Of a DNA stretch of 64,000 nucleotides, positions 4,977 through 53,768 are shown piece after piece. Source of the stretch: Pseudomonas aeruginosa PAO1 (lineage in GTDB: Bacteria > Pseudomonadota > Gammaproteobacteria > Pseudomonadales > Pseudomonadaceae); assembly GCF_000006765.1 (NCBI RefSeq), contig NC_002516.2. One strand, written 5' to 3'. The position numbers and the translations under genes are program-made. Numbering within the stretch: the stretch's first letter is position 1; each line of letters opens with the position of its first letter. The notes beneath the pieces are model-generated. The model worked only from the letters and a program-made list of their open reading frames with translations. It ran no database searches and was not told where the DNA came from.

Positions 4977-5809
4977 TCGGAACTCCTGGTTGCGGGGGCG
5001 GCAGCGGCCGGCTCGAAGGCTTCGAGGTAGCGCGCCAGGCTGCCGCGGGACAGTTCGCCGAGATGGCTGCCCAGCAGGCGGCCCTCGGCGGTGTAGAAAA
5101 CGGTGGTGGGCAAGGCGACCGAGCCGACCTGCTGGCCAAGCTGCCCGCCGTTGTCGAACAGCAGGTTGTCCAGGCGCAGGTTCTCGCCCTGGAGGAAATG
5201 GCGCACGGTCTCGGCGCTCTCGCCCTGGTTGGCGAAGAGGAACACTACGTCGGGATTCTCCGCCTGCGCCTGTTGCAGCACCGGCATCTCGCGCCGACAC
5301 GGCGGGCACCAGCTGGCCCAGAGGTTGATCACCAGCGGGCGGCCCCGGAAATCGGCCAGTTGCACCGACTCGCCGGCGGCGTTGCGCAGGCTCAGTTCGG
5401 GCAGGCGCGTACCGCGCTCGTAGATGCCCAGGCCCAGGCTGCCAAGCAGCCAGAACGCCAGTCCGAGGCTGGCGCCGACACCCAGCGAGCGACGTAGCGC
5501 CGGTCGCCGCCAGGCCCAGAACAGCGCGCCGAGTACAGCGGCGAGCAGGCCTGGCCAGGCGAGGAAACCGCCATCGCGGATATCCAGCATCTGTGCGAAG
5601 TCGCCGCGGTACTGCGGCCAGTAGCGCACCACGAAGGCCAGGCGCGCCACCAGCAGGCCGAGCAACAACAGGTTGAACAGCACCGGCTCGGCGTTGCGCC
5701 CGCCGCCGCGCGCCGCCAGCCAACCACCGAGCAGCGCGGCGCCGAGGGCGAGGAACAGCAGCAGGTGTTGCAGCGAGACCACCAGCGGCCCCAGGGAAAA
5801 ACTCAGCAT
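4973..5809 (-). CDS. dsbE: Membrane-anchored TlpA/DsbE-type thioredoxin with an Lgt-like N-terminal membrane domain; PA2477
   Basis: INLWASWCPPCRREMP and ALPTT motifs; N-terminal ~130 aa hydrophobic; start coupled to the dsbD stop (TGATG). Confidence 0.85.
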   Translation of the reverse strand: MLSFSLGPLVVSLQHLLLFLALGAALLGGWLAARGGGRNAEPVLFNLLLLGLLVARLAFVVRYWPQYRGDFAQMLDIRDGGFLAWPGLLAAVLGALFWAWRRPALRRSLGVGASLGLAFWLLGSLGLGIYERGTRLPELSLRNAAGESVQLADFRGRPLVINLWASWCPPCRREMPVLQQAQAENPDVVFLFANQGESAETVRHFLQGENLRLDNLLFDNGGQLGQQVGSVALPTTVFYTAEGRLLGSHLGELSRGSLARYLEAFEPAAAAPATRSSE

Positions 5810-7572
5810 CAGCCGCGCTCCCGGGTCGCCTGCCAATGGGCGAGGAAGCCGCCGGCGTCGACTTCGCCGGTCAACCGGCGCGCGCGGCGCTCCTCGCCTT
5901 CCGGGCCGATCCAGATCAGGCTCGGCGGGCCGGGTACCTGGTAGCGGTGCAGCAGCTCGCGGCTGGCGGCGTTATCCGCGGTCACGTCGAGCCGCAGCAG
6001 GCGCACGCCCTGCAGGGCGGCGAGCACATCGGGCTTGGCGAACACCTGTTTCTCCATGATCCGGCAGGACACGCACCAGTCAGCGTAGTAGTCGAGCAGC
6101 ACCCATTGTCCCTCGGCCTTGGCCGCAGCCAACTGACGGTCCAGCTCGGCCGGCTGGCTCACCGTGAGGAACGCCTCGTGGGCGCTGGCCGTCGGCGTAG
6201 CGCCCCGGTTCGCCGCCGCATACACCTGTAGCGGACGCCAGGGGTCGTCGGCCCCGGCCGCGGCGCCCAGCAACATCGCCGCGCCCCAGAGACCGAAGAT
6301 GCAGCCCGCCGCGCCGAACAGCACCGCGTGCCGCGCCAGGCCTCGCGCCGTATGCAGCGCGGCGTAGGCCAGGACCAGCAGCAACGCGCCGCCAAGGCCG
6401 ATCCACAGCGCCTCGCCGAGCAGCGGACGCAGGAGTATCCAGGCGGTGCCGAGGAAAAGGAAGCCGAACACGCCCTTGACCAGGTTCATCCAGGGACCGG
6501 GCTTGGGCAGGAAGCGGCTGCCGACCGTCACCAGCAGCAACAGCGGCATGCCGATGCCGAGGCCCAGGCTGAACAGCACCAGGCCGCCATGCAGGGCATT
6601 GCCGGTCTGCGCGATATAGAGCAAGGCGCCGGCCAGCGGCGCGGTCATGCACGGCCCCACCAGCAGCCCGGACAACGCGCCGAGCGCGGCCGCGCCGGCC
6701 AGGCTGCCGCCCTTGCGGCCGCGACTGAGACCGTCGAGGCGGTCGCGCAGGGCAGCCGGCAGTTGCAGTTCGAAGAAGCCGAACATCGGCAGCGCGAGGA
6801 ACACGAACAGCGCGGCGAAGCTGCCCAGCAGCCACGGCTGTTGCAGCCAGGCCTGCAGGTTGCCGCCAAGCAGCGCCGCGACCACCCCGAGTCCGGCGTA
6901 GACCAGCGCCATGCTCAGCACGTAGCTACCGGCCAGCAGCAGGCCGCGACGAGGGCCGGCGCCGCTGCCGACCACCAGCCCGGCGAGGATCGGCAGCATC
7001 GGCAGCGAACAGGGAGCGAACGCCAGCAGCAGGCCGAGGCCGAAGAACAGCAACAGGCTCCAGGCCAGGTTGCCGGCCTGCAGGCTGCCGGCCAGGCCCT
7101 GGTCCTCGGCGACTTCGCCGCTCGTCCCGGCGGCGGCAGGGCCGGTACCGCCCAGGTCGAGCGCCTGGCTCTGCGGCGGATAGCACAGGCCGGCATCGGC
7201 GCAGCCCTGCCAGCCCAGGCGCAGTTGTCCGGCGGCGGCCGCCGGCAGGGTCAGTTCCAGGCTCTGGCGATAGACCTGCGACTCGCCGAAGAACTCGTCG
7301 CTGTGGCTTTCGCCGGGCGGCAGCTGCGGCTGCAAGGCCGGGTCGAGTCCGTCGAAGCGCAGGCGCTTCTGGTACAGGTAGTAGCCCGGCGCGATCTGCC
7401 AGCGCAGTTGCACCTGGCCGTCGTCGAGGCGCTCCCAGGTGAAGCGGAAGGCTTTCTCCACCGGCAGGAAATCCGTCTGCGTCGCGCCGCGCGGCGCGAA
7501 CAGGTCGTCGCCCGGTTGCGCCTGGGACAGGCCCGGCAGCAGGAGCATCAGGAGCAGGATCAACACACGCAT
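5809..7572 (-). CDS. dsbD: Thiol:disulfide interchange protein DsbD (DipZ2); PA2478
   Basis: N-domain GCADAGLCYPP, TM-domain APCSLPM and GPCMTAPL cysteines, C-terminal thioredoxin ADWCVSC. Confidence 0.93.
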   Translation of the reverse strand: MRVLILLLMLLLPGLSQAQPGDDLFAPRGATQTDFLPVEKAFRFTWERLDDGQVQLRWQIAPGYYLYQKRLRFDGLDPALQPQLPPGESHSDEFFGESQVYRQSLELTLPAAAAGQLRLGWQGCADAGLCYPPQSQALDLGGTGPAAAGTSGEVAEDQGLAGSLQAGNLAWSLLLFFGLGLLLAFAPCSLPMLPILAGLVVGSGAGPRRGLLLAGSYVLSMALVYAGLGVVAALLGGNLQAWLQQPWLLGSFAALFVFLALPMFGFFELQLPAALRDRLDGLSRGRKGGSLAGAAALGALSGLLVGPCMTAPLAGALLYIAQTGNALHGGLVLFSLGLGIGMPLLLLVTVGSRFLPKPGPWMNLVKGVFGFLFLGTAWILLRPLLGEALWIGLGGALLLVLAYAALHTARGLARHAVLFGAAGCIFGLWGAAMLLGAAAGADDPWRPLQVYAAANRGATPTASAHEAFLTVSQPAELDRQLAAAKAEGQWVLLDYYADWCVSCRIMEKQVFAKPDVLAALQGVRLLRLDVTADNAASRELLHRYQVPGPPSLIWIGPEGEERRARRLTGEVDAGGFLAHWQATRERG

Positions 7573-7603: not shown

Positions 7604-7635
7604 AGCATGGCCAGCGACGATTAACAGGCCGTTAA
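7604..7635 (-). promoter_or_regulatory. DsbR (QseB-type) direct-repeat box and -10 of the dsbDEG promoter
   Basis: TTAA-N7-TTAA (7621-7635), then on the minus strand N11 and CATGCT (7609-7604); fits the TTA-N8-TTAA site I recall for DsbR. Confidence 0.7.
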
Positions 7636-7675
7636 CGCGGCCACGGGAAAACCCCGGCGACGCGCCGGGCGGGGC

Positions 7676-7710
7676 ATAATCCTGGCTTAATTCGCCCGCT
7701 TCAGACTCCT
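7676..7710 (+). promoter_or_regulatory. Second DsbR-like box and -10, probable autoregulatory dsbRS promoter
   Basis: ATAA-N7-TTAA (7676-7690), N11, CAGACT (7702-7707): same spacing as the dsbD side. Confidence 0.55.
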
Positions 7711-7734: not shown

Positions 7735-8415
7735 ATGCATGTACTGCTCACCGAAGACGACGACCTGATCGCCAGCGGCATCGTCGCCGGCCTCAACGCC
7801 CAGGGCCTGACCGTGGACCGGGTGGCCAGCGCCGCCGATACCCAGGCGCTGCTCCAGGTGGCGCGCTTCGACGTGCTGGTCCTCGATCTCGGCCTGCCCG
7901 ACGAGGACGGCCTGCGCCTGCTGCAGCGCCTGCGCCAGCAGGGCGTCGACCTGCCGGTGCTGGTGCTGACCGCGCGCGACGCGGTGACCGACCGGGTCGC
8001 CGGGCTGCAGGCCGGCGCCGACGACTACCTGCTCAAGCCCTTCGACCTGCGCGAACTCGGCGCCCGCCTGCATACCTTGCAGCGGCGCTCCGCCGGGCGT
8101 TGCGTCAACGTCATCGAACACGGCCGCCTCAGCTACGATCCGAGCACCCGCGAAACCTGGCTCGACGGCCGCCCCGTGGAACTGTCGCGACGCGAACAGG
8201 CGCTGTTGCAGGCATTGCTCAACAACCGCGGGCGGATCCTCAGCGGCGAGCAGCTCAAGGACAGCGTCTATGGCTTCGGCGACGAGGTCGAGAGCAACGC
8301 CCTCAACGTCCACATCCATCACCTGCGGCGCAAGCTCGGCAACGCCATCGTGCAGACCGTGCGCGGCCTCGGCTACCGCCTCGGGCCGGCGCGCGGCGAC
8401 GGAGACGACGCATGA
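7735..8415 (+). CDS. dsbR: OmpR/QseB-family response regulator DsbR; PA2479
   Basis: EDD, DLGLPD, LTARD, KPF receiver motifs; winged-helix NALNVHIHHLRRKL and TVRGLGY. Confidence 0.9.
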   Translation: MHVLLTEDDDLIASGIVAGLNAQGLTVDRVASAADTQALLQVARFDVLVLDLGLPDEDGLRLLQRLRQQGVDLPVLVLTARDAVTDRVAGLQAGADDYLLKPFDLRELGARLHTLQRRSAGRCVNVIEHGRLSYDPSTRETWLDGRPVELSRREQALLQALLNNRGRILSGEQLKDSVYGFGDEVESNALNVHIHHLRRKLGNAIVQTVRGLGYRLGPARGDGDDA

Positions 8416-32573: not shown

Positions 32574-33920
32574 TCAGAGGACTTGCAGCGGGTATTCGAC
32601 GATCAGGCGGACTTCGTCGAGGTCCGACTCGAAGCTATCGGAGCGCACGGTGGCCTGGCGCACGCGGAACGCCAGGTCCTTGGCCGCGCCACCCTGCACC
32701 ACGTACTTGACCTCCACGTCGCGTTCCCAGCGGCCCTGGTTGGTCAGCGGGTTGCCGTTGGCGTCGGTGCGCATGTAGACGCTGTTGGCATTCGAATAAT
32801 CGGCGTCCCAGCCCTTGCCATAGCGGGTCATGAAGCTCAGCCCCGGCACGCCGAAGGCGGCCATGTCGAGGTCGTAGCGGAGCATCAGCGAGCGTTCCTT
32901 GGGCGAGTTGAAGTCGCTGTACTGGATCGAGTTGTCCAGGTAGATGGAGTCGGTCTGGCGCAGGTAGTCGAAGTCGTCGTCGCCGTTGTTGCGCTGGTAC
33001 GACAGCAGCACCTGGTGCGGACCGTAGGCGAAGCCGCCGCGCACGCTCCAGATGTCGTTGTCGAGTTCGCCCATCACCTGCCTGCCCTGGTCCTTGACCT
33101 TGTAGTAGTTGGCGCCGCCGAGCAGGGACAGCTTGTCGTCCAGCGGATAGTTGAAGCTGGTGCCGGCGTAGTACTGGTCCCAGGCGTCCTTCTGGCGGCT
33201 GCCGTAGAGGCTGACGCTCCAGTGCTCGGTGGCCTGGTAGTCGCCGCCGGCGTAGGCGACCCACGGCGAGTCGATGCGCCGGCCGGTGTAGAAGCTGTAG
33301 AAGTCGTCGCTGCCGCTGGTGCTGTTCGGCTGGGTCATCGAGTTCAGCTTGCCGGCCTGCAGGGTCAGGCCCTTCGCCAGGCTGTCGTTGACCAGGGTGA
33401 AGCCACGGAAGCTGGAGGGGAACAGCCGGCTGTTGCCGTACTGGATCACCGGGGTTTCCGGGAACACGTCGCCGACCCGCAGCACGGTGCCGTACCAGCG
33501 CAGCTTGACCGCGCCGCCGGCTCGCGAATAGTCGTCCTGCGGCCGCCCCTGGTCGTCATAGGGCAGCAGGTCGACGCTACCGCCGGCGCCGGAACGCCCG
33601 CCGCCGCTGTCCAGGCGCACGCCGAGCTGGGCGAAGGCGTCGATGCCGACGCCCAGCGTGCCCTGGGTGAAGCCCGAGGAAAAGTTGGCCATGAAGCCCT
33701 GCACCCACTCCTCGGTGTAGCCGCCGCCCGCCGGGCTCGATTGGCCCTTGCGGAAGTCGCGGTTGAAGTAGAAGTTGCGCAGCAGCAGGTTGACCTCGCT
33801 GCCCTCGATGAAACCTTCCTTGCTCCGCTCGGCGTTCTCCTCGGCGACGGCCGAGGCCATCAGTCCGGCGCCCAGCAGCAGTGGAAGCGTCCACAGTCGT
33901 TTCTTTCCATCCCCTTGCAT
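32574..33920 (-). CDS. opdT: OprD-family porin OpdT (OccD4); PA2505
   Basis: GFIEGS, RNFYFNRDF, FSSGFTQGTLGVG, SRLFPSSFRG, ERDVEVKYVVQ OprD motifs; GGAG RBS before ATG 33920 (ATG 33944 possible). Confidence 0.92.
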   Translation of the reverse strand: MQGDGKKRLWTLPLLLGAGLMASAVAEENAERSKEGFIEGSEVNLLLRNFYFNRDFRKGQSSPAGGGYTEEWVQGFMANFSSGFTQGTLGVGIDAFAQLGVRLDSGGGRSGAGGSVDLLPYDDQGRPQDDYSRAGGAVKLRWYGTVLRVGDVFPETPVIQYGNSRLFPSSFRGFTLVNDSLAKGLTLQAGKLNSMTQPNSTSGSDDFYSFYTGRRIDSPWVAYAGGDYQATEHWSVSLYGSRQKDAWDQYYAGTSFNYPLDDKLSLLGGANYYKVKDQGRQVMGELDNDIWSVRGGFAYGPHQVLLSYQRNNGDDDFDYLRQTDSIYLDNSIQYSDFNSPKERSLMLRYDLDMAAFGVPGLSFMTRYGKGWDADYSNANSVYMRTDANGNPLTNQGRWERDVEVKYVVQGGAAKDLAFRVRQATVRSDSFESDLDEVRLIVEYPLQVL

Positions 33921-34091
33921 GGCGATTGCTCCAGATCGGTTCATGTCTGTTTTTCTTCTGCGGCCATGCCTTGCGGCGCTGGCTGTGCGTGAACTTCTGG
34001 TCGATCGCGCCCCCGCGCAGTCCTGCCGCAACCGGCATTGACCGTGGGGCTGATTCTGGAACCGGGGAAATGACGCAGACATGAGGCGGGG

Positions 34092-34107
34092 ATTACTTTT
34101 CCGCAAT
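34092..34107. promoter_or_regulatory. CzcR-like box in the opdT/PA2506 intergenic region
   Basis: ATTAC-TTTTCC-GCAAT, one mismatch from ATTAC-N6-GTAAT found perfect at 53470. Confidence 0.55.
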
Positions 34108-34143
34108 CTTAACTCGCACTTAATGCGCTTCGCGCAGACTCCT
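34108..34143 (+). promoter_or_regulatory. DsbR/QseB-type box and -10 oriented toward PA2506
   Basis: CTTAA-N6-CTTAA (34108-34123), N11, CAGACTCCT (34135-34143), same layout as 7676-7710. Confidence 0.55.
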
Positions 34144-34282
34144 CCGCCATGCAACGGAGCATCGCCGAAGTTATCGGAAACGTAATTTTCCACTCACCCT
34201 CGGGTAATCCGCCCGCTCTTACTCTTTGCTCAAACGGGACGAATACCTCGCCCCGGCGACGAGCCAACCCGAGAGGTTTGCC

Positions 34283-34501
34283 ATGAAGATCATCCCGATG
34301 CTGCTGGCCGCCCTGCTGGCGACCGGCGCCGCCACTGCCCAGGCCCAGGACGGCAGCGAACGCTCCTGGCAGTACAACGCCGAATTCCGCGCCGCGCAGA
34401 AAGAACTGCGCGAAAAGCGCCTGCAGAAGCAACAACTGGAAGCGCAAGCGCAGAAGACCGACCGCAGCAAATGCGCCGAGCGCAAGAACGGCAACGGCTG
34501 A
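34283..34501 (+). CDS. 72-aa exported protein; PA2506
   Basis: GAGG RBS; Sec signal MKIIPMLLAALLATGAATAQA; charged helical mature part with a single Cys. Confidence 0.8.
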   Translation: MKIIPMLLAALLATGAATAQAQDGSERSWQYNAEFRAAQKELREKRLQKQQLEAQAQKTDRSKCAERKNGNG

Positions 34502-34561
34502 GCAGCCTTTCACCGAGCAATACACTTGTCCTTTTTGGGTTGCTCCTTTGGACAAGTCCTG

Positions 34562-34588
34562 AGGCGCCAGTCATGGCGCCTTTTTTTA
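34562..34588 (+). terminator. Intrinsic terminator after PA2506
   Basis: AGGCGCCA-gtca-TGGCGCCT then TTTTTT. Confidence 0.85.
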
Positions 34589-34658
34589 TCCGCCGTCGCG
34601 CCTGGCGGAAGAAGGCGGCATGGTCGCCAGCGACCAGCCGCCCTCCCCGCTCCCCGCC

Positions 34659-35591
34659 TTACCCCTGCAATGCCCGCGGCCGCTGGCTGCGGCGCTCGGC
34701 GGCGGGTGCCGGGCTGGCCTGGAGCTGGAAGTCGAAATCCAGTTCGGCGAAGCGTCCGCCCTCCACGCCGCGGTCGCGGGCCGCGGCGGGGTCGTCGTTG
34801 AAGCGCAGGTCGCCGATCAGCCCATCGCGGGTGGCGTAGGCGAAGTCGTCCCACAGGTAGCGGTCGCCCGCCAGGTTGATCTGGGTGGTCAGGTGGCGAT
34901 GGCCGGGCGCCGAGACGAAGAAGTGAATGTGCGCCGGCCGCTGGCCGTGGCGGCCGAGGCGGTCGAGCAGTTCCTGGGTCGGGCCGTCGCTCGGGCAACC
35001 GTAGCCGGACGGCACGATGCTGCGCGCACGGTAGCGGCCGTCGGCGTCGGTGCGGATGCGCCGGCGCAGGTTGTATTCGGACTGGCTGCTGTCGAAGTAG
35101 GAATAGGTGCCTTGGGTATTGGCGTGCCAGACATCGACGATGGCCCCGGCCAGCGGCTGGCCGTCGGGACCGCTGACGCGGCCCTGGAGGAACATCACGG
35201 TGCCGGCGTCGCGGCCGTCGTCCATCCGTGCCTCGCCATCGCTCAGCGGCGCGCCGGCGACGTACAGCGGCCCTTCGATGGTGCGCGGCGTGCCGCCGGT
35301 GAGGCCGGCCTCGGCGTCCTGGGCGTCGAGCAGCAGGTCCAGGTAATGCTCCAGGCCCAGCCCGGCGGCCAGCAGGCCGGCTTCCTGGCGGCTGCCCAGG
35401 CGGTTCAGGTAGTCCACCGCTTTCCAGAATTCGTCGGGCGTGACCTGCATCTCTTCGATCAGCTTCGCCGTGTCGTCGAGGATGCGCCGCACCAGGGCCT
35501 TGGTGCGCGGATCGCCGCGTTCGTTGAGCTGGCCGCTGGCCTCTTCGAAGAAGCGCTGGACATCGGCAGTCTGGGAAATCTTCACGGTCAT
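34659..35591 (-). CDS. catA: Catechol 1,2-dioxygenase
   Basis: GTPRTIEGPLYVAGAP, VWHAN..G.Y, RPAHIHFF, DDFAYATR intradiol motifs; 310 aa from MTVKIS. Confidence 0.97.
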   Translation of the reverse strand: MTVKISQTADVQRFFEEASGQLNERGDPRTKALVRRILDDTAKLIEEMQVTPDEFWKAVDYLNRLGSRQEAGLLAAGLGLEHYLDLLLDAQDAEAGLTGGTPRTIEGPLYVAGAPLSDGEARMDDGRDAGTVMFLQGRVSGPDGQPLAGAIVDVWHANTQGTYSYFDSSQSEYNLRRRIRTDADGRYRARSIVPSGYGCPSDGPTQELLDRLGRHGQRPAHIHFFVSAPGHRHLTTQINLAGDRYLWDDFAYATRDGLIGDLRFNDDPAAARDRGVEGGRFAELDFDFQLQASPAPAAERRSQRPRALQG

Positions 35592-53698: not shown

Positions 53699-53768
53699 GC
53701 AACGATATGAAATTACATTTCCAGGATTCTATCCAGGCAACGCCCGAAATGTAACTTTATAGCAATGC
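53699..53768. promoter_or_regulatory. Two inverted 23-bp Zur-like boxes upstream of czcR
   Basis: GAAATGTAACTTTATAGCAATGC (+, 53746-53768) and GAAATGTAATTTCATATCGTTGC (-, 53721-53699); 18/23 identical to each other, each 16/22 to the recalled gammaproteobacterial Zur consensus. Confidence 0.55.

What the first reader, a model, noticed from the sequence alone, without database searches (positions are those of the whole stretch)
34108..34588. A dsb-type promoter repeated 26 kb away in front of a 72-aa secreted single-Cys protein
Seen: ATCTTAACTCGCACTTAATGCGCTTCGCGCAGACTCCT aligns without gaps to the dsbR promoter GGCATAATCCTGGCTTAATTCGCCCGCTTCAGACTCCT: same WTAA-N7-TTAA repeat, same 11-bp spacer, identical CAGACTCCT. 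It points at a stand-alone gene with RBS, Sec signal, one Cys (SKCAERK) and its own terminator, and abuts the CzcR-like box. Knowledge: QseB-type systems often induce small periplasmic proteins that tune the sensor or bind metal. Inference: PA2506 is an unrecognised member of the copper-responsive DsbR regulon, making this intergenic region a Cu/Zn integration point. Caveat: CTTAA-N6-CTTAA also fits PmrA and other QseB-like regulators.
Basis: partly seen in the sequence, partly recalled or inferred. Interest (0 to 1): 0.7.

Follow-up and report, generated by a model that had tools for sequence, protein, structure and literature searches.

The report
Known DsbR promoter of PA2506
The repeated sequence is a real copper-responsive (DsbR) promoter in front of the small secreted protein PA2506 of Pseudomonas aeruginosa, but this was already shown experimentally in 2020; what looks new is that PA2506 resembles the porin-blocking protein PtrA and is encoded next to the porin OpdT in several lineages.

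Summary
The window is P. aeruginosa PAO1 (window + 2,790,000). The 38-mers at 7673-7710 (dsbR) and 34106-34143 (PA2506) align ungapped. The published DsbR consensus TAA-N7-TTAAT occurs three times in 64 kb (0.03 expected): the dsbD and dsbR sites and this one. All three are followed 10 nt later by CAnnCT.

Yu et al. (bioRxiv 2020.08.17.255257) reported a top-four DsbR ChIP-seq peak at opdT-pa2506, an EMSA shift and DsbR-dependent pa2506-lux.

Added here:
- P. paraeruginosa keeps every motif position while the spacers diverge.
- Two CopR/CzcR-type promoter templates (GTAAT-N6-MTCAY) flank the DsbR box, one facing opdT and one facing PA2506. They recur upstream of homologues elsewhere and lie near a published CzcR ChIP summit.
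- PA2506 belongs to a small family (GSERS...FR..Q). Its other members hit only the NCBIfam PtrA (PA2808) model, and in three further lineages they sit directly downstream of an opdT-like porin gene.
- The 3'UTR carries a hairpin with covarying stems and an invariant anti-Shine-Dalgarno-like loop.

The single Cys is lineage-specific. Core finding: already known. Leads: moderately interesting.

The parts
34108..34124 (+). DsbR box: direct repeat CTTAAC-TCGCA-CTTAAT (contains TAA-N7-TTAAT), oriented toward PA2506
   Evidence: Matches the published footprint consensus. It is one of three matches in the window, with 0.03 expected. Both half-sites are invariant in P. paraeruginosa while the 5-nt spacer has two substitutions. 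DsbR ChIP-seq and EMSA on this region are published.
34135..34140 (+). -10-like hexamer CAGACT of the DsbR-dependent promoter P1; predicted TSS about 34147 (inferred)
   Evidence: It lies exactly 10 nt after TTAAT, as at dsbR (CAGACT, 7702-7707) and dsbD (CATGCT, 7604-7609, - strand). All three DsbR boxes fit TAA-N7-TTAAT-N10-CAnnCT. It is invariant in P. paraeruginosa while both flanks change. No TSS has been mapped.
34171..34209 (+). Proximal CopR/CzcR-type promoter template P2 for PA2506: box TTATCGGAAACGTAAT (34171-34186), CTCAC (34193-34197), -10-like GTAATC (34204-34209); predicted TSS about 34214-34220 (inferred)
   Evidence: GTAAT-N6-MTCAY occurs only twice in the window, with 0.03 expected. 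The same template sits 72-91 nt upstream of the ATG of every PA2506 homologue examined. It is invariant in P. paraeruginosa apart from spacer changes. The published CzcR ChIP-seq summit is at 34220.
34069..34107 (-). opdT-directed CopR/CzcR-type promoter template: box ATTGCGGAAAAGTAAT (34092-34107), CTCAT (34081-34085), -10-like GTCATT (34069-34074).
   Evidence: It is the second of the two GTAAT-N6-MTCAY sites in the window. The same template lies upstream of the opdT-like genes in L013 and L014. Its motif positions are invariant in P. paraeruginosa.
34271..34276 (+). Shine-Dalgarno GAGAGG of PA2506
   Evidence: Read directly from the sequence. A 1-nt indel upstream in P. paraeruginosa breaks the longer TTG-initiated ORF, which supports the ATG at 34283 as the start.
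34283..34501 (+). PA2506 CDS: 72 aa with a predicted Sec signal peptide (residues 1-21), the invariant GSERS motif at the mature N-terminus, F35-R36-x2-Q39, one long helix, and a variable C-terminal tail carrying Cys64
   Evidence: The ORF is. The family alignment is. hhalign against the remote homologues gives 98% probability, E 3e-13. The AF2 model has helices at 4-22 and 26-69 with pLDDT 67.
34524..34557 (+). 3'UTR hairpin (ACTTGTCC...GGACAAGT) with the loop motif CTCCTTTGG (34543-34551), which resembles an anti-Shine-Dalgarno sequence
   Evidence: The stretch 34512-34587 is 100% identical to P. paraeruginosa, whereas the CDS differs at 21 of 219 positions. P. duriflava, L013 and L014 have a hairpin at the same place with different stem sequences and the same loop motif. 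The motif occurs once in the window.
34561..34589 (+). Intrinsic terminator of PA2506
   Evidence: Nine-pair stem with six G-C pairs, followed by T7.
7677..7707 (+). Reference DsbR-dependent dsbR promoter: TAATCCTGGCTTAAT-N10-CAGACT
   Evidence: The DNase I footprint is published. The gene at 7735-8415 encodes an OmpR-family response regulator.
7604..7634 (-). Reference DsbR-dependent dsbD promoter: TAACGGCCTGTTAAT-N10-CATGCT
   Evidence: It is the second footprinted region. The gene at 5809-7572 (-) encodes DsbD.
32574..33920 (-). opdT (PA2505), an OprD-family porin and the divergent neighbour of PA2506
   Evidence: OpdT protein rises 18- to 25-fold under copper.

Best explanation
Positions 34108-34140 form a DsbR (PA2479)-activated promoter of PA2506.

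**Promoter P1.** Phosphorylated DsbR binds the direct repeat CTTAAC-N5-CTTAAT. The promoter-proximal half-site ends 10 nt upstream of a weak -10 (CAGACT). This is the geometry of a Pho box (recalled from memory), so DsbR would stand in for a -35 element and recruit RNA polymerase, with transcription starting near 34147. DsbR binding and DsbR-dependent expression are shown in the literature. The promoter geometry and the TSS are inferred.

**Flanking promoters.** Two CopR/CzcR-class promoters flank this site, sharing the template xTxxC-N6-GTAAT-N6-MTCAY-N5/6-(-10). One drives opdT on the minus strand and directly abuts the DsbR box. The other (P2) lies 35 nt downstream of P1's -10 and also drives PA2506. 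On this reading PA2506 responds to copper or silver through DsbRS, and to zinc or copper through CzcRS and probably CopRS. The template and its conservation are shown here. Which regulator acts at which site is inferred.

**Protein.** PA2506 is a 51-residue mature periplasmic helix belonging to a small family related to PtrA (PA2808). The most likely role, inferred and held at roughly one chance in three, is that it docks on the periplasmic face of the neighbouring OprD-family porin OpdT and modulates its permeability during metal stress. PtrA has been reported to do this to OprD.
For: **DsbR promoter**
- The published consensus matches at 3 sites against 0.03 expected.
- All three sites share the N10-CAnnCT geometry and point at their genes.
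- ChIP-seq (top four peaks), EMSA and pa2506-lux are published, as is copper induction.
- No sigma-70 consensus promoter exists in the region.
- No TSS was detected in uninduced PA14, which is consistent with activator dependence.

**Phylogenetic footprint**
- PAO1 and P. paraeruginosa differ at 19 positions within 34060-34215. None falls in the 72 motif positions (P = 2.7e-6).

**CopR/CzcR-type templates**
- The two GTAAT-N6-MTCAY sites are the only ones in the window.
- The same template lies upstream of ptrA-like and opdT-like genes in four other lineages, at similar distances from the ATG.
- The CzcR ChIP summit is at 34220.

**Protein family**
- Mature-region BLASTP to P0014 gives 49% identity over 35 residues, E 3e-10.
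- hhalign between the PA2506 clade and the remote group gives 98% probability.
- All six remote members hit only NF041599 (PtrA N-terminal domain). The L012 protein scores 31.9 bits against a cut-off of 31.

**Link to the porin**
- An opdT-like gene lies immediately upstream in P. duriflava, L013 and L014, and is the divergent neighbour in P. aeruginosa and P. paraeruginosa.
- L014 is arranged czcR-like, czcS-like, opdT-like, ptrA-like.
- PtrA associates with OprD and reduces imipenem entry (bioRxiv 10.64898/2026.08.14.744805).
Against: - No TSS is mapped, and CAGACT is a poor -10 (3 of 6 matches to TATAAT).
- P1 would give a 136-nt leader with no special structure (fold z = 0).
- The published lux and EMSA fragments contain all three sites, so they do not prove that the 34108-34124 box is the one used.
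- The motif positions in the footprint test were chosen after I had seen the alignment.
- PA2506 itself gives no NF041599 hit.
- The homologues' NF041599 hits disappear when the signal peptide is removed. I could not obtain a true PtrA sequence for direct comparison.
- P. resinovorans and L012 carry the small gene with no opdT-like gene within 4-6 kb.
- The first half-sites of the two PAO1 GTAAT boxes are poor: 3 and 4 mismatches to GAAAC.
- The CzcR ChIP enrichment is only 3.9-fold, with a weak FIMO motif (p = 0.006).
- No PA2506-OpdT interaction has been tested by anyone.
Confidence: 0.8

Rival explanations
1. The TTAA repeat is mainly the target of another PmrA/QseB-type response regulator of P. 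aeruginosa (PmrA, BqsR/CarR or similar), and DsbR binding is secondary cross-talk.
For: CTTAAC-N5-CTTAAT is close to the YTTAAK-N5-YTTAAK and TTAAG-N6-TTAAG boxes recalled from memory for PmrA and BqsR. The DsbR EMSA used micromolar SUMO-tagged protein on a 478-bp fragment.
Against: In-vivo ChIP-seq places this site among DsbR's four strongest peaks, and pa2506-lux follows the dsbS/dsbRS genotype. All three boxes in the window have C or T, not G, at the fifth half-site position, and they share the same distance to CAnnCT with the two footprinted dsb sites.
Confidence: 0.07
2. The DsbR site chiefly serves the divergent porin gene opdT, either helping or hindering the CopR/CzcR-class regulator bound to the abutting box. 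The effect on PA2506 would then be a by-product.
For: The DsbR box touches the opdT-directed GTAAT box (34092-34107 against 34108-34124). OpdT is among the proteins most strongly induced by copper. Yu et al. list opdT as a candidate target.
Against: The repeat is directional and points away from opdT. Its distance to a -10-like hexamer reproduces the dsbR and dsbD promoters only on the + strand. pa2506-lux, in the PA2506 orientation, is DsbR-dependent. No opdT reporter has been tested. The two roles are not mutually exclusive.
Confidence: 0.15
3. PA2506 is not porin-directed. It could be an accessory that tunes the DsbS sensor, or a thiol/copper-binding periplasmic peptide acting through Cys64 and serviced by DsbG or DsbE.
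For: PA2506 is co-regulated with dsbDEG by DsbR. Cys64 is conserved between P. aeruginosa and P. paraeruginosa. Homologues in L012 and L014 lie near DsbA-like and DsbB-like genes. From memory, small periplasmic proteins that feed back on sensor kinases are common (for example CpxP), and DsbG protects single-Cys periplasmic proteins.
Against: No homologue outside the aeruginosa group has any Cys. The conserved part is the N-terminal GSERS...FR..Q segment, not the tail. There is no His- or Met-rich metal site. The linkage to opdT-like genes in four lineages points elsewhere.
Confidence: 0.2
4. The resemblance between the two 38-mers is chance.
For: The 9-mer CAGACTCCT alone is not significant.
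Against: The composite patterns never occur in shuffles. The motifs are conserved in a sister species. Binding data are published.
Confidence: 0.01

Closest known systems
DsbR (PA2479) regulon promoters of P. aeruginosa (dsbDEG, dsbRS, dsbB, pa2506/opdT, pa4803), Yu et al. 2020 preprint (journal version recalled as 2022)
   Same: It has the same box (TAA-N7-TTAAT), the same orientation toward the gene, and the same 10-nt distance to a CAnnCT hexamer as the two footprinted dsb sites. This very locus is listed and tested in that paper.
   Different: Nothing essential differs. The paper does not, in the text I could read, pinpoint the box at 34108-34124, describe the box-to-(-10) geometry, or test opdT.
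PhoB/Pho-box class of OmpR-family activated promoters (from memory)
   Same: A direct repeat with about 11-bp periodicity ends 10 bp upstream of a weak -10 and replaces the -35.
   Different: The regulator, half-site sequence and signal differ. The analogy is one of architecture only.
PtrA (PA2808), the CopR/CzcR-induced small periplasmic protein reported to bind OprD and block carbapenem entry
   Same: PA2506 is also a small Sec-exported helical protein, induced by metals through OmpR-family two-component systems. Its homologues hit only the PtrA NCBIfam model. It is genomically linked to an OprD-family porin, and its conserved part is N-terminal while the C-terminal tail is free.
   Different: PA2506 itself is below detection by NF041599. 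It has an added DsbR promoter and a Cys-containing tail. Its neighbour is OpdT, not OprD. No functional data exist.
CopR/CusR/CzcR boxes (CTGACA-N5-GTAAT, ATTACAT-N2-ATGTAAT, GAAAC-N6-GTAAT)
   Same: The GTAAT promoter-proximal half-site is shared. The homologous promoters in L014 match the palindrome at 12-13 of 14 positions. A CzcR ChIP peak lies on the region.
   Different: The two PAO1 boxes have degenerate distal half-sites (8 and 10 of 14 matches to the palindrome).
CpxQ, an sRNA cut from the 3'UTR of cpxP mRNA in enterobacteria (from memory)
   Same: The mRNA encodes a small periplasmic protein induced by an envelope-stress two-component system. It carries a 3'UTR with a hairpin and a terminator that is more conserved than the coding region.
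   Different: No evidence exists for processing, Hfq binding or targets. There is no sequence relationship, and the only Rfam match is a sub-threshold hit to mmgR (21 bits against 41).

Membership tests
DsbR-dependent promoter (DsbR regulon) | Match to the footprint-derived consensus TAA-N7-TTAAT / TTAA-N7-TTAA | tested here: met
   34110-34124 is one of 3 matches in 64 kb (0.03 expected) and one of 2 TTAA-N7-TTAA matches.
DsbR-dependent promoter (DsbR regulon) | Same orientation and spacing to a -10-like element as the validated dsbD and dsbR promoters | tested here: met
   All three sites fit TAA-N7-TTAAT-N10-CAnnCT and point at the downstream gene.
DsbR-dependent promoter (DsbR regulon) | DsbR binds the site in vivo and in vitro | not testable with these tools
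   Published: a top-four ChIP-seq peak and an EMSA on the -376 to +102 fragment. The fragment is larger than the box.
DsbR-dependent promoter (DsbR regulon) | Expression depends on DsbR/DsbS and responds to copper | not testable with these tools
   Published: pa2506-lux is positively regulated by DsbR, and PA2506 is copper-induced.
DsbR-dependent promoter (DsbR regulon) | Motif conserved in orthologous loci | tested here: met
   In P. paraeruginosa the half-sites and CAGACT are invariant while the spacers are substituted.
PtrA family (NCBIfam NF041599, PtrA N-terminal domain) | Score at or above the curated cut-off (31 bits) against NF041599 | tested here: not met
   PA2506 and its P. paraeruginosa orthologue give no hit at E <= 10.
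PtrA family (NCBIfam NF041599, PtrA N-terminal domain) | Demonstrable homologues that belong to the family (transitive homology) | tested here: inconclusive
   Six homologues (hhalign 98% to the PA2506 clade) hit only NF041599 at 20-32 bits, one above the cut-off. The hits vanish or fall to 13 bits without the signal peptide. No authentic PtrA sequence could be fetched.
PtrA family (NCBIfam NF041599, PtrA N-terminal domain) | Small Sec-exported protein induced by a metal-sensing two-component system | tested here: met
   72 aa with a signal-like N-terminus. DsbR control is published, and a CopR/CzcR-type template is present.
PtrA family (NCBIfam NF041599, PtrA N-terminal domain) | Physical association with an OprD-family porin | not testable with these tools
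   Only genomic linkage to opdT or opdT-like genes is shown, in 4 of 6 lineages. The structure tool takes single chains only.
CopR/CzcR-type binding site | Match to GAAAC-N6-GTAAT with two or fewer mismatches | tested here: not met
   No such site exists in 33921-34282. The boxes at 34092-34107 (-) and 34171-34186 (+) have an intact GTAAT but 4 and 3 mismatches in the first half.
CopR/CzcR-type binding site | Regulator occupancy | not testable with these tools
   Published CzcR ChIP-seq peak_46: summit at window 34220, 3.9-fold enrichment. CopR occupancy is unknown.
PmrA/BqsR-type box | Half-sites CTTAAG / TTAAG (consensus recalled from memory) | tested here: not met
   The half-sites read CTTAAC and CTTAAT. 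Cross-binding is not excluded.
3'UTR-derived sRNA / known Rfam family | Rfam gathering score reached | tested here: not met
   The only match is RF00519 (mmgR) at 21.1 bits against 41, E = 0.09.
3'UTR-derived sRNA / known Rfam family | Conserved structure with covarying stem and conserved single-stranded motif | tested here: met
   Four lineages have four different stems and the same (G)CUCCUUUGG loop. Only four sequences were available and no formal covariation statistic was computed.

The most novel reading that the evidence does not exclude
PA2506 is a second PtrA-type periplasmic porin regulator of P. aeruginosa, dedicated to its neighbour OpdT. The porin gene and the small gene would form an ancestral metal-responsive pair, to which P. 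aeruginosa added a DsbR promoter. The PA2506 mRNA may also release a 3'UTR-derived sRNA with an anti-Shine-Dalgarno loop. That would give a combined protein and RNA output for outer-membrane permeability control under Cu and Zn stress.
Probability: 0.3. Interest if true: 0.6.

Novelty: already known. Interest (0 to 1): 0.3.

Why it matters
The core claim needs no new work, because DsbR control of PA2506 is published.

The value of this re-examination is a base-pair-level map of three adjacent response-regulator-dependent promoters in one 150-bp region. That map explains how Cu (DsbRS, probably CopRS) and Zn (CzcRS) signals could converge on a porin gene and its small neighbour.

It also gives a function hypothesis for an orphan protein. 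If PA2506 acts on OpdT as PtrA is reported to act on OprD, then post-translational control of porins by small periplasmic proteins would be a family trait rather than a single case. That bears on metal-induced changes in outer-membrane permeability in an important opportunistic pathogen.

Tried and rejected
- **Protein annotation.** Pfam and NCBIfam on PA2506 gave no meaningful hit. A PDB profile search returned only noise. The AF2 monomer is a single long helix (pLDDT 67), so I did not run a fold search.
- **Homologue searches.** The word-indexed search found only P. aeruginosa sequences. The exhaustive phmmer search and the metagenome scan were needed to find remote relatives. A tblastn of a homologue against plasmids found nothing.
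- **Getting a true PtrA sequence.** This failed.
- **RNA checks.** The Rfam scan of 33800-34750 gave only a sub-threshold mmgR hit. The P1 leader folds no better than shuffles (z = 0), so I rejected a riboswitch or attenuator.
- **Promoter checks.** No sigma-70 consensus promoter lies in the region. No canonical CzcR box (two or fewer mismatches) lies in the intergenic region.
- **TSS data.** Wurtzel 2012 gives 'NA' for both genes in uninduced PA14.
- **DAP-seq.** The supplements of Trouillon 2021 and the 2024 PLoS Genetics paper were not held or had no entry.
- **Discarded sequence.** P0013 looks like a fusion or chimera on a 1.3-kb contig and was not used as a family member.
Full report
**1. 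Where we are.**
The window is P. aeruginosa PAO1. A supplementary table of a CzcR ChIP-seq paper gives PA2506 at 2824283-2824501 and opdT at 2822574-2823920. These equal window 34283-34501 and 32574-33920, so the offset is 2,790,000.

The gene at 7735-8415 encodes an OmpR-family response regulator. It is followed by a histidine kinase and preceded divergently by a DsbD gene. This is the dsbDEG / dsbRS locus (PA2478-PA2480). PA2506 lies between opdT (divergent) and catA (convergent).

**2.
Both 38-mers are at the stated places, 7673-7710 and 34106-34143. They align without gaps at 23 of 38 positions.
- WTAA-N7-TTAA-N11-CAGACT occurs only at these two places and never in shuffles.
- The 9-mer CAGACTCCT on its own is not significant.
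- The ORF, RBS, signal-like N-terminus, single Cys and terminator are all present.

**3. It is a DsbR promoter, and that is published.**
Yu et al. (bioRxiv 10.1101/2020.08.17.255257) footprinted two DsbR-protected regions between dsbD and dsbR. Both contain TAA-N7-TTAAT. The paper reports the following for this locus:
- The opdT-pa2506 intergenic region is among the top four DsbR ChIP-seq peaks.
- SUMO-DsbR shifts a pa2506 promoter fragment.
- pa2506-lux is positively regulated by DsbR.
- PA2506 and opdT are strongly copper-induced.

In the window, TAA-N7-TTAAT occurs exactly three times against 0.03 expected. The sites are 7620-7634 (-, facing dsbD), 7677-7691 (+, facing dsbR) and 34110-34124 (+, facing PA2506).

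**4. Promoter anatomy (new detail, inferred).**
Aligned on the box, all three sites read (T/A)TAA(C/T)-N6-TTAAT-N10-CA(G/T)(A/G)CT. Each points at its downstream gene. A direct repeat ending 10 nt upstream of a weak -10, with no -35, is the Pho-box arrangement (from memory). On that analogy DsbR would replace the -35 contact.
- No sigma-70 consensus promoter is found in the region.
- Neither PA2506 nor opdT had a detectable TSS in uninduced PA14, as expected for activator-dependent promoters.
- The predicted P1 start is about 34147, giving a 136-nt leader with no unusual fold.

**5. Phylogenetic footprint.**
The orthologous locus of P. paraeruginosa ATCC 9027 (L006) is 95% identical over 700 nt. 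Within 34060-34215 there are 19 differences, and none falls in the 72 positions I assign to motifs. Those motifs are the two DsbR half-sites, CAGACT, and the two GTAAT templates described below. The hypergeometric P is 2.7e-6. The caveat is that I fixed the elements after having seen the alignment, although I derived them from the literature consensus and from distant loci. The CCT after CAGACT changes to GTT, so the functional unit is the hexamer.

**6. Two more promoters in the same 150 bp.**
Upstream of every remote PA2506 homologue, and of the opdT-like genes next to them, I found one template. It reads xTxxC-N6-GTAAT-N6-(C/A)TCA(C/T)-N5/6-(-10-like hexamer), with the hexamer ending 72-91 nt before the ATG of the small gene.

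In the window, GTAAT-N6-MTCAY occurs exactly twice against 0.03 expected:
- At 34182-34197 (+), 35 nt downstream of P1's -10 and facing PA2506.
- At 34081-34096 (-), facing opdT.

GTAAT is the half-site shared by CopR (CTGACA-N5-GTAAT), CusR (ATTACAT-N2-ATGTAAT) and CzcR (GAAAC-N6-GTAAT). The L014 versions match the palindrome at 12-13 of 14 positions. The PAO1 versions match only 8-10 of 14, and none is within two mismatches of the CzcR consensus.

A 2026 CzcR ChIP-seq study reports a 3.9-fold peak with its summit at window 34220. That is 63 bp from the PA2506 ATG and 300 bp from opdT. The authors filtered out hypothetical proteins and credited opdT. The summit is closer to the PA2506-proximal box (centre 34178) than to the opdT box (centre 34100).

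So 'Cu/Zn integration point' is a fair description. Which of CopR and CzcR acts at which box is inferred, not shown.

**7. What PA2506 is.**
Close homologues exist only in P. aeruginosa and P. paraeruginosa. An exhaustive phmmer search and a metagenome scan added six remote relatives: P. duriflava P0014, P. resinovorans P0016/P0017, and loci L012-L014.

All have a signal peptide, then A-(E/Q)-(D/G)-GSERS, then F-R-x2-Q, and then a variable tail.
- Similarity lies in the mature part: 49% over 35 residues, pairwise E 3e-10.
- hhalign between the two groups gives 98% probability, E 3e-13.
- The AF2 model is one long helix.
- None of the remote members has a Cys, so Cys64 is a lineage-specific feature of the tail.

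All six remote members hit one NCBIfam model only, NF041599 'co-regulatory protein PtrA (PA2808) N-terminal domain', at 20-32 bits. The L012 protein exceeds the 31-bit cut-off. PA2506 itself gives no hit. With signal peptides removed, the hits fall to 13 bits or vanish. I therefore rate PtrA-family membership as likely but unproven, and I could not fetch an authentic PtrA sequence.

**8. Linkage to the porin.**
- In P. duriflava an opdT-like gene (frameshifted) ends 190 nt upstream of the small gene. The same order holds in L013 and L014, where the porin is 62% identical to OpdT.
- L014 reads czcR-like (71% identical to CzcR), czcS-like, opdT-like, ptrA-like, then a DsbB-family gene.
- L012 has a CzcA-like RND pump, the small gene, a MerR regulator and a DsbA-like gene.
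- P. resinovorans has it among Zur-type zinc genes.

A 2026 preprint (10.64898/2026.08.14.744805) reports several things about PtrA:
- It raises imipenem resistance without lowering OprD levels.
- It co-purifies with OprD and is membrane-associated only when OprD is present.
- It is modelled at OprD's periplasmic vestibule with its C-terminus free.

The paper alludes to genomic proximity of PtrA homologues to OprD in other pseudomonads. It mentions neither PA2506 nor OpdT.

By analogy, PA2506 may gate OpdT, whose protein rises 18- to 25-fold under copper. This is my preferred functional hypothesis, at about 0.3. Alternatives are sensor tuning and thiol chemistry through Cys64.

**9. The 3'UTR.**
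Positions 34512-34587 are identical in P. paraeruginosa, although the CDS differs at 21 of 219 positions. P. duriflava, L013 and L014 each have a hairpin at the same place. The stems are unrelated in sequence, and the loop carries an invariant (G)CUCCUUUGG, which resembles the anti-Shine-Dalgarno end of 16S rRNA. The motif occurs once in the window. The only Rfam match is a sub-threshold hit to mmgR, an sRNA with anti-SD loops. A 3'UTR-derived sRNA, as with CpxQ from cpxP, is a reasonable lead. I did not pursue targets.

**10. Verdict.**
The emphasis on the Cys and on the 9-mer is misplaced.

The new leads are the three-promoter map, the PtrA-like family with opdT linkage, and the conserved 3'UTR hairpin. 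They are testable with ordinary experiments. Overall interest is modest.

Noticed in passing
window 34512-34589; L001 6199-6290; L013 2243-2304; L014 4205-4300: The 3'UTR of PA2506 is more conserved than its CDS. It carries a hairpin whose stem sequence differs in each lineage while the loop motif (G)CUCCUUUGG is invariant. This could be a 3'UTR-derived sRNA or a protein-binding element.
   Followed up: partly
L001/L007 (P. duriflava), L001 4907-5810: The opdT-like gene directly upstream of the PA2506 homologue is split over at least four reading frames, so it looks like a pseudogene. The small gene and its promoter template remain intact.
   Followed up: partly
L014 12-6309; L012 488-5850: PA2506/PtrA-like genes sit among metal and Dsb genes in other lineages. 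L014 reads czcR-like, czcS-like, opdT-like, small gene, beta-helix protein, DsbB-family. L012 reads CzcA-like RND pump, small gene, MerR regulator, DsbA-like thioredoxin.
   Followed up: partly
window 34220 (PAO1 2824220): The published CzcR ChIP-seq peak_46 is credited to opdT, but its summit is 63 bp upstream of PA2506 and 300 bp from opdT. Hypothetical proteins were filtered out of that paper's main tables.
   Followed up: yes
window 53751-53766: GTAACTTTATAGCAAT lies in the czcC-czcR intergenic region, 52 nt upstream of the czcR ATG. It is the only hit within two mismatches of GAAAC-N6-GTAAT that sits next to a czc gene, and is presumably the CzcR autoregulatory site.
   Followed up: no
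proteins P0002, P0013, P0007: Three PA2506 variants in public data. One has a 9-residue tandem duplication (QQLEAQAQK). One has a frameshifted signal-peptide end. One is a 95-aa ORF on a 1.3-kb contig that fuses an unrelated N-terminus to the PA2506 C-terminal half, probably a chimera or rearrangement.
   Followed up: no
window 34226-34282 vs L006: A 1-nt indel in P. paraeruginosa at window 34255 breaks the longer TTG-initiated ORF. This supports the annotated ATG at 34283 as the true start.
   Followed up: yes
window 33921-34282: Wurtzel 2012 lists no TSS for PA14_32250 (PA2506) or PA14_32270 (opdT) in LB at 28 or 37 C, so both genes appear silent without metal inducers.
   Followed up: yes
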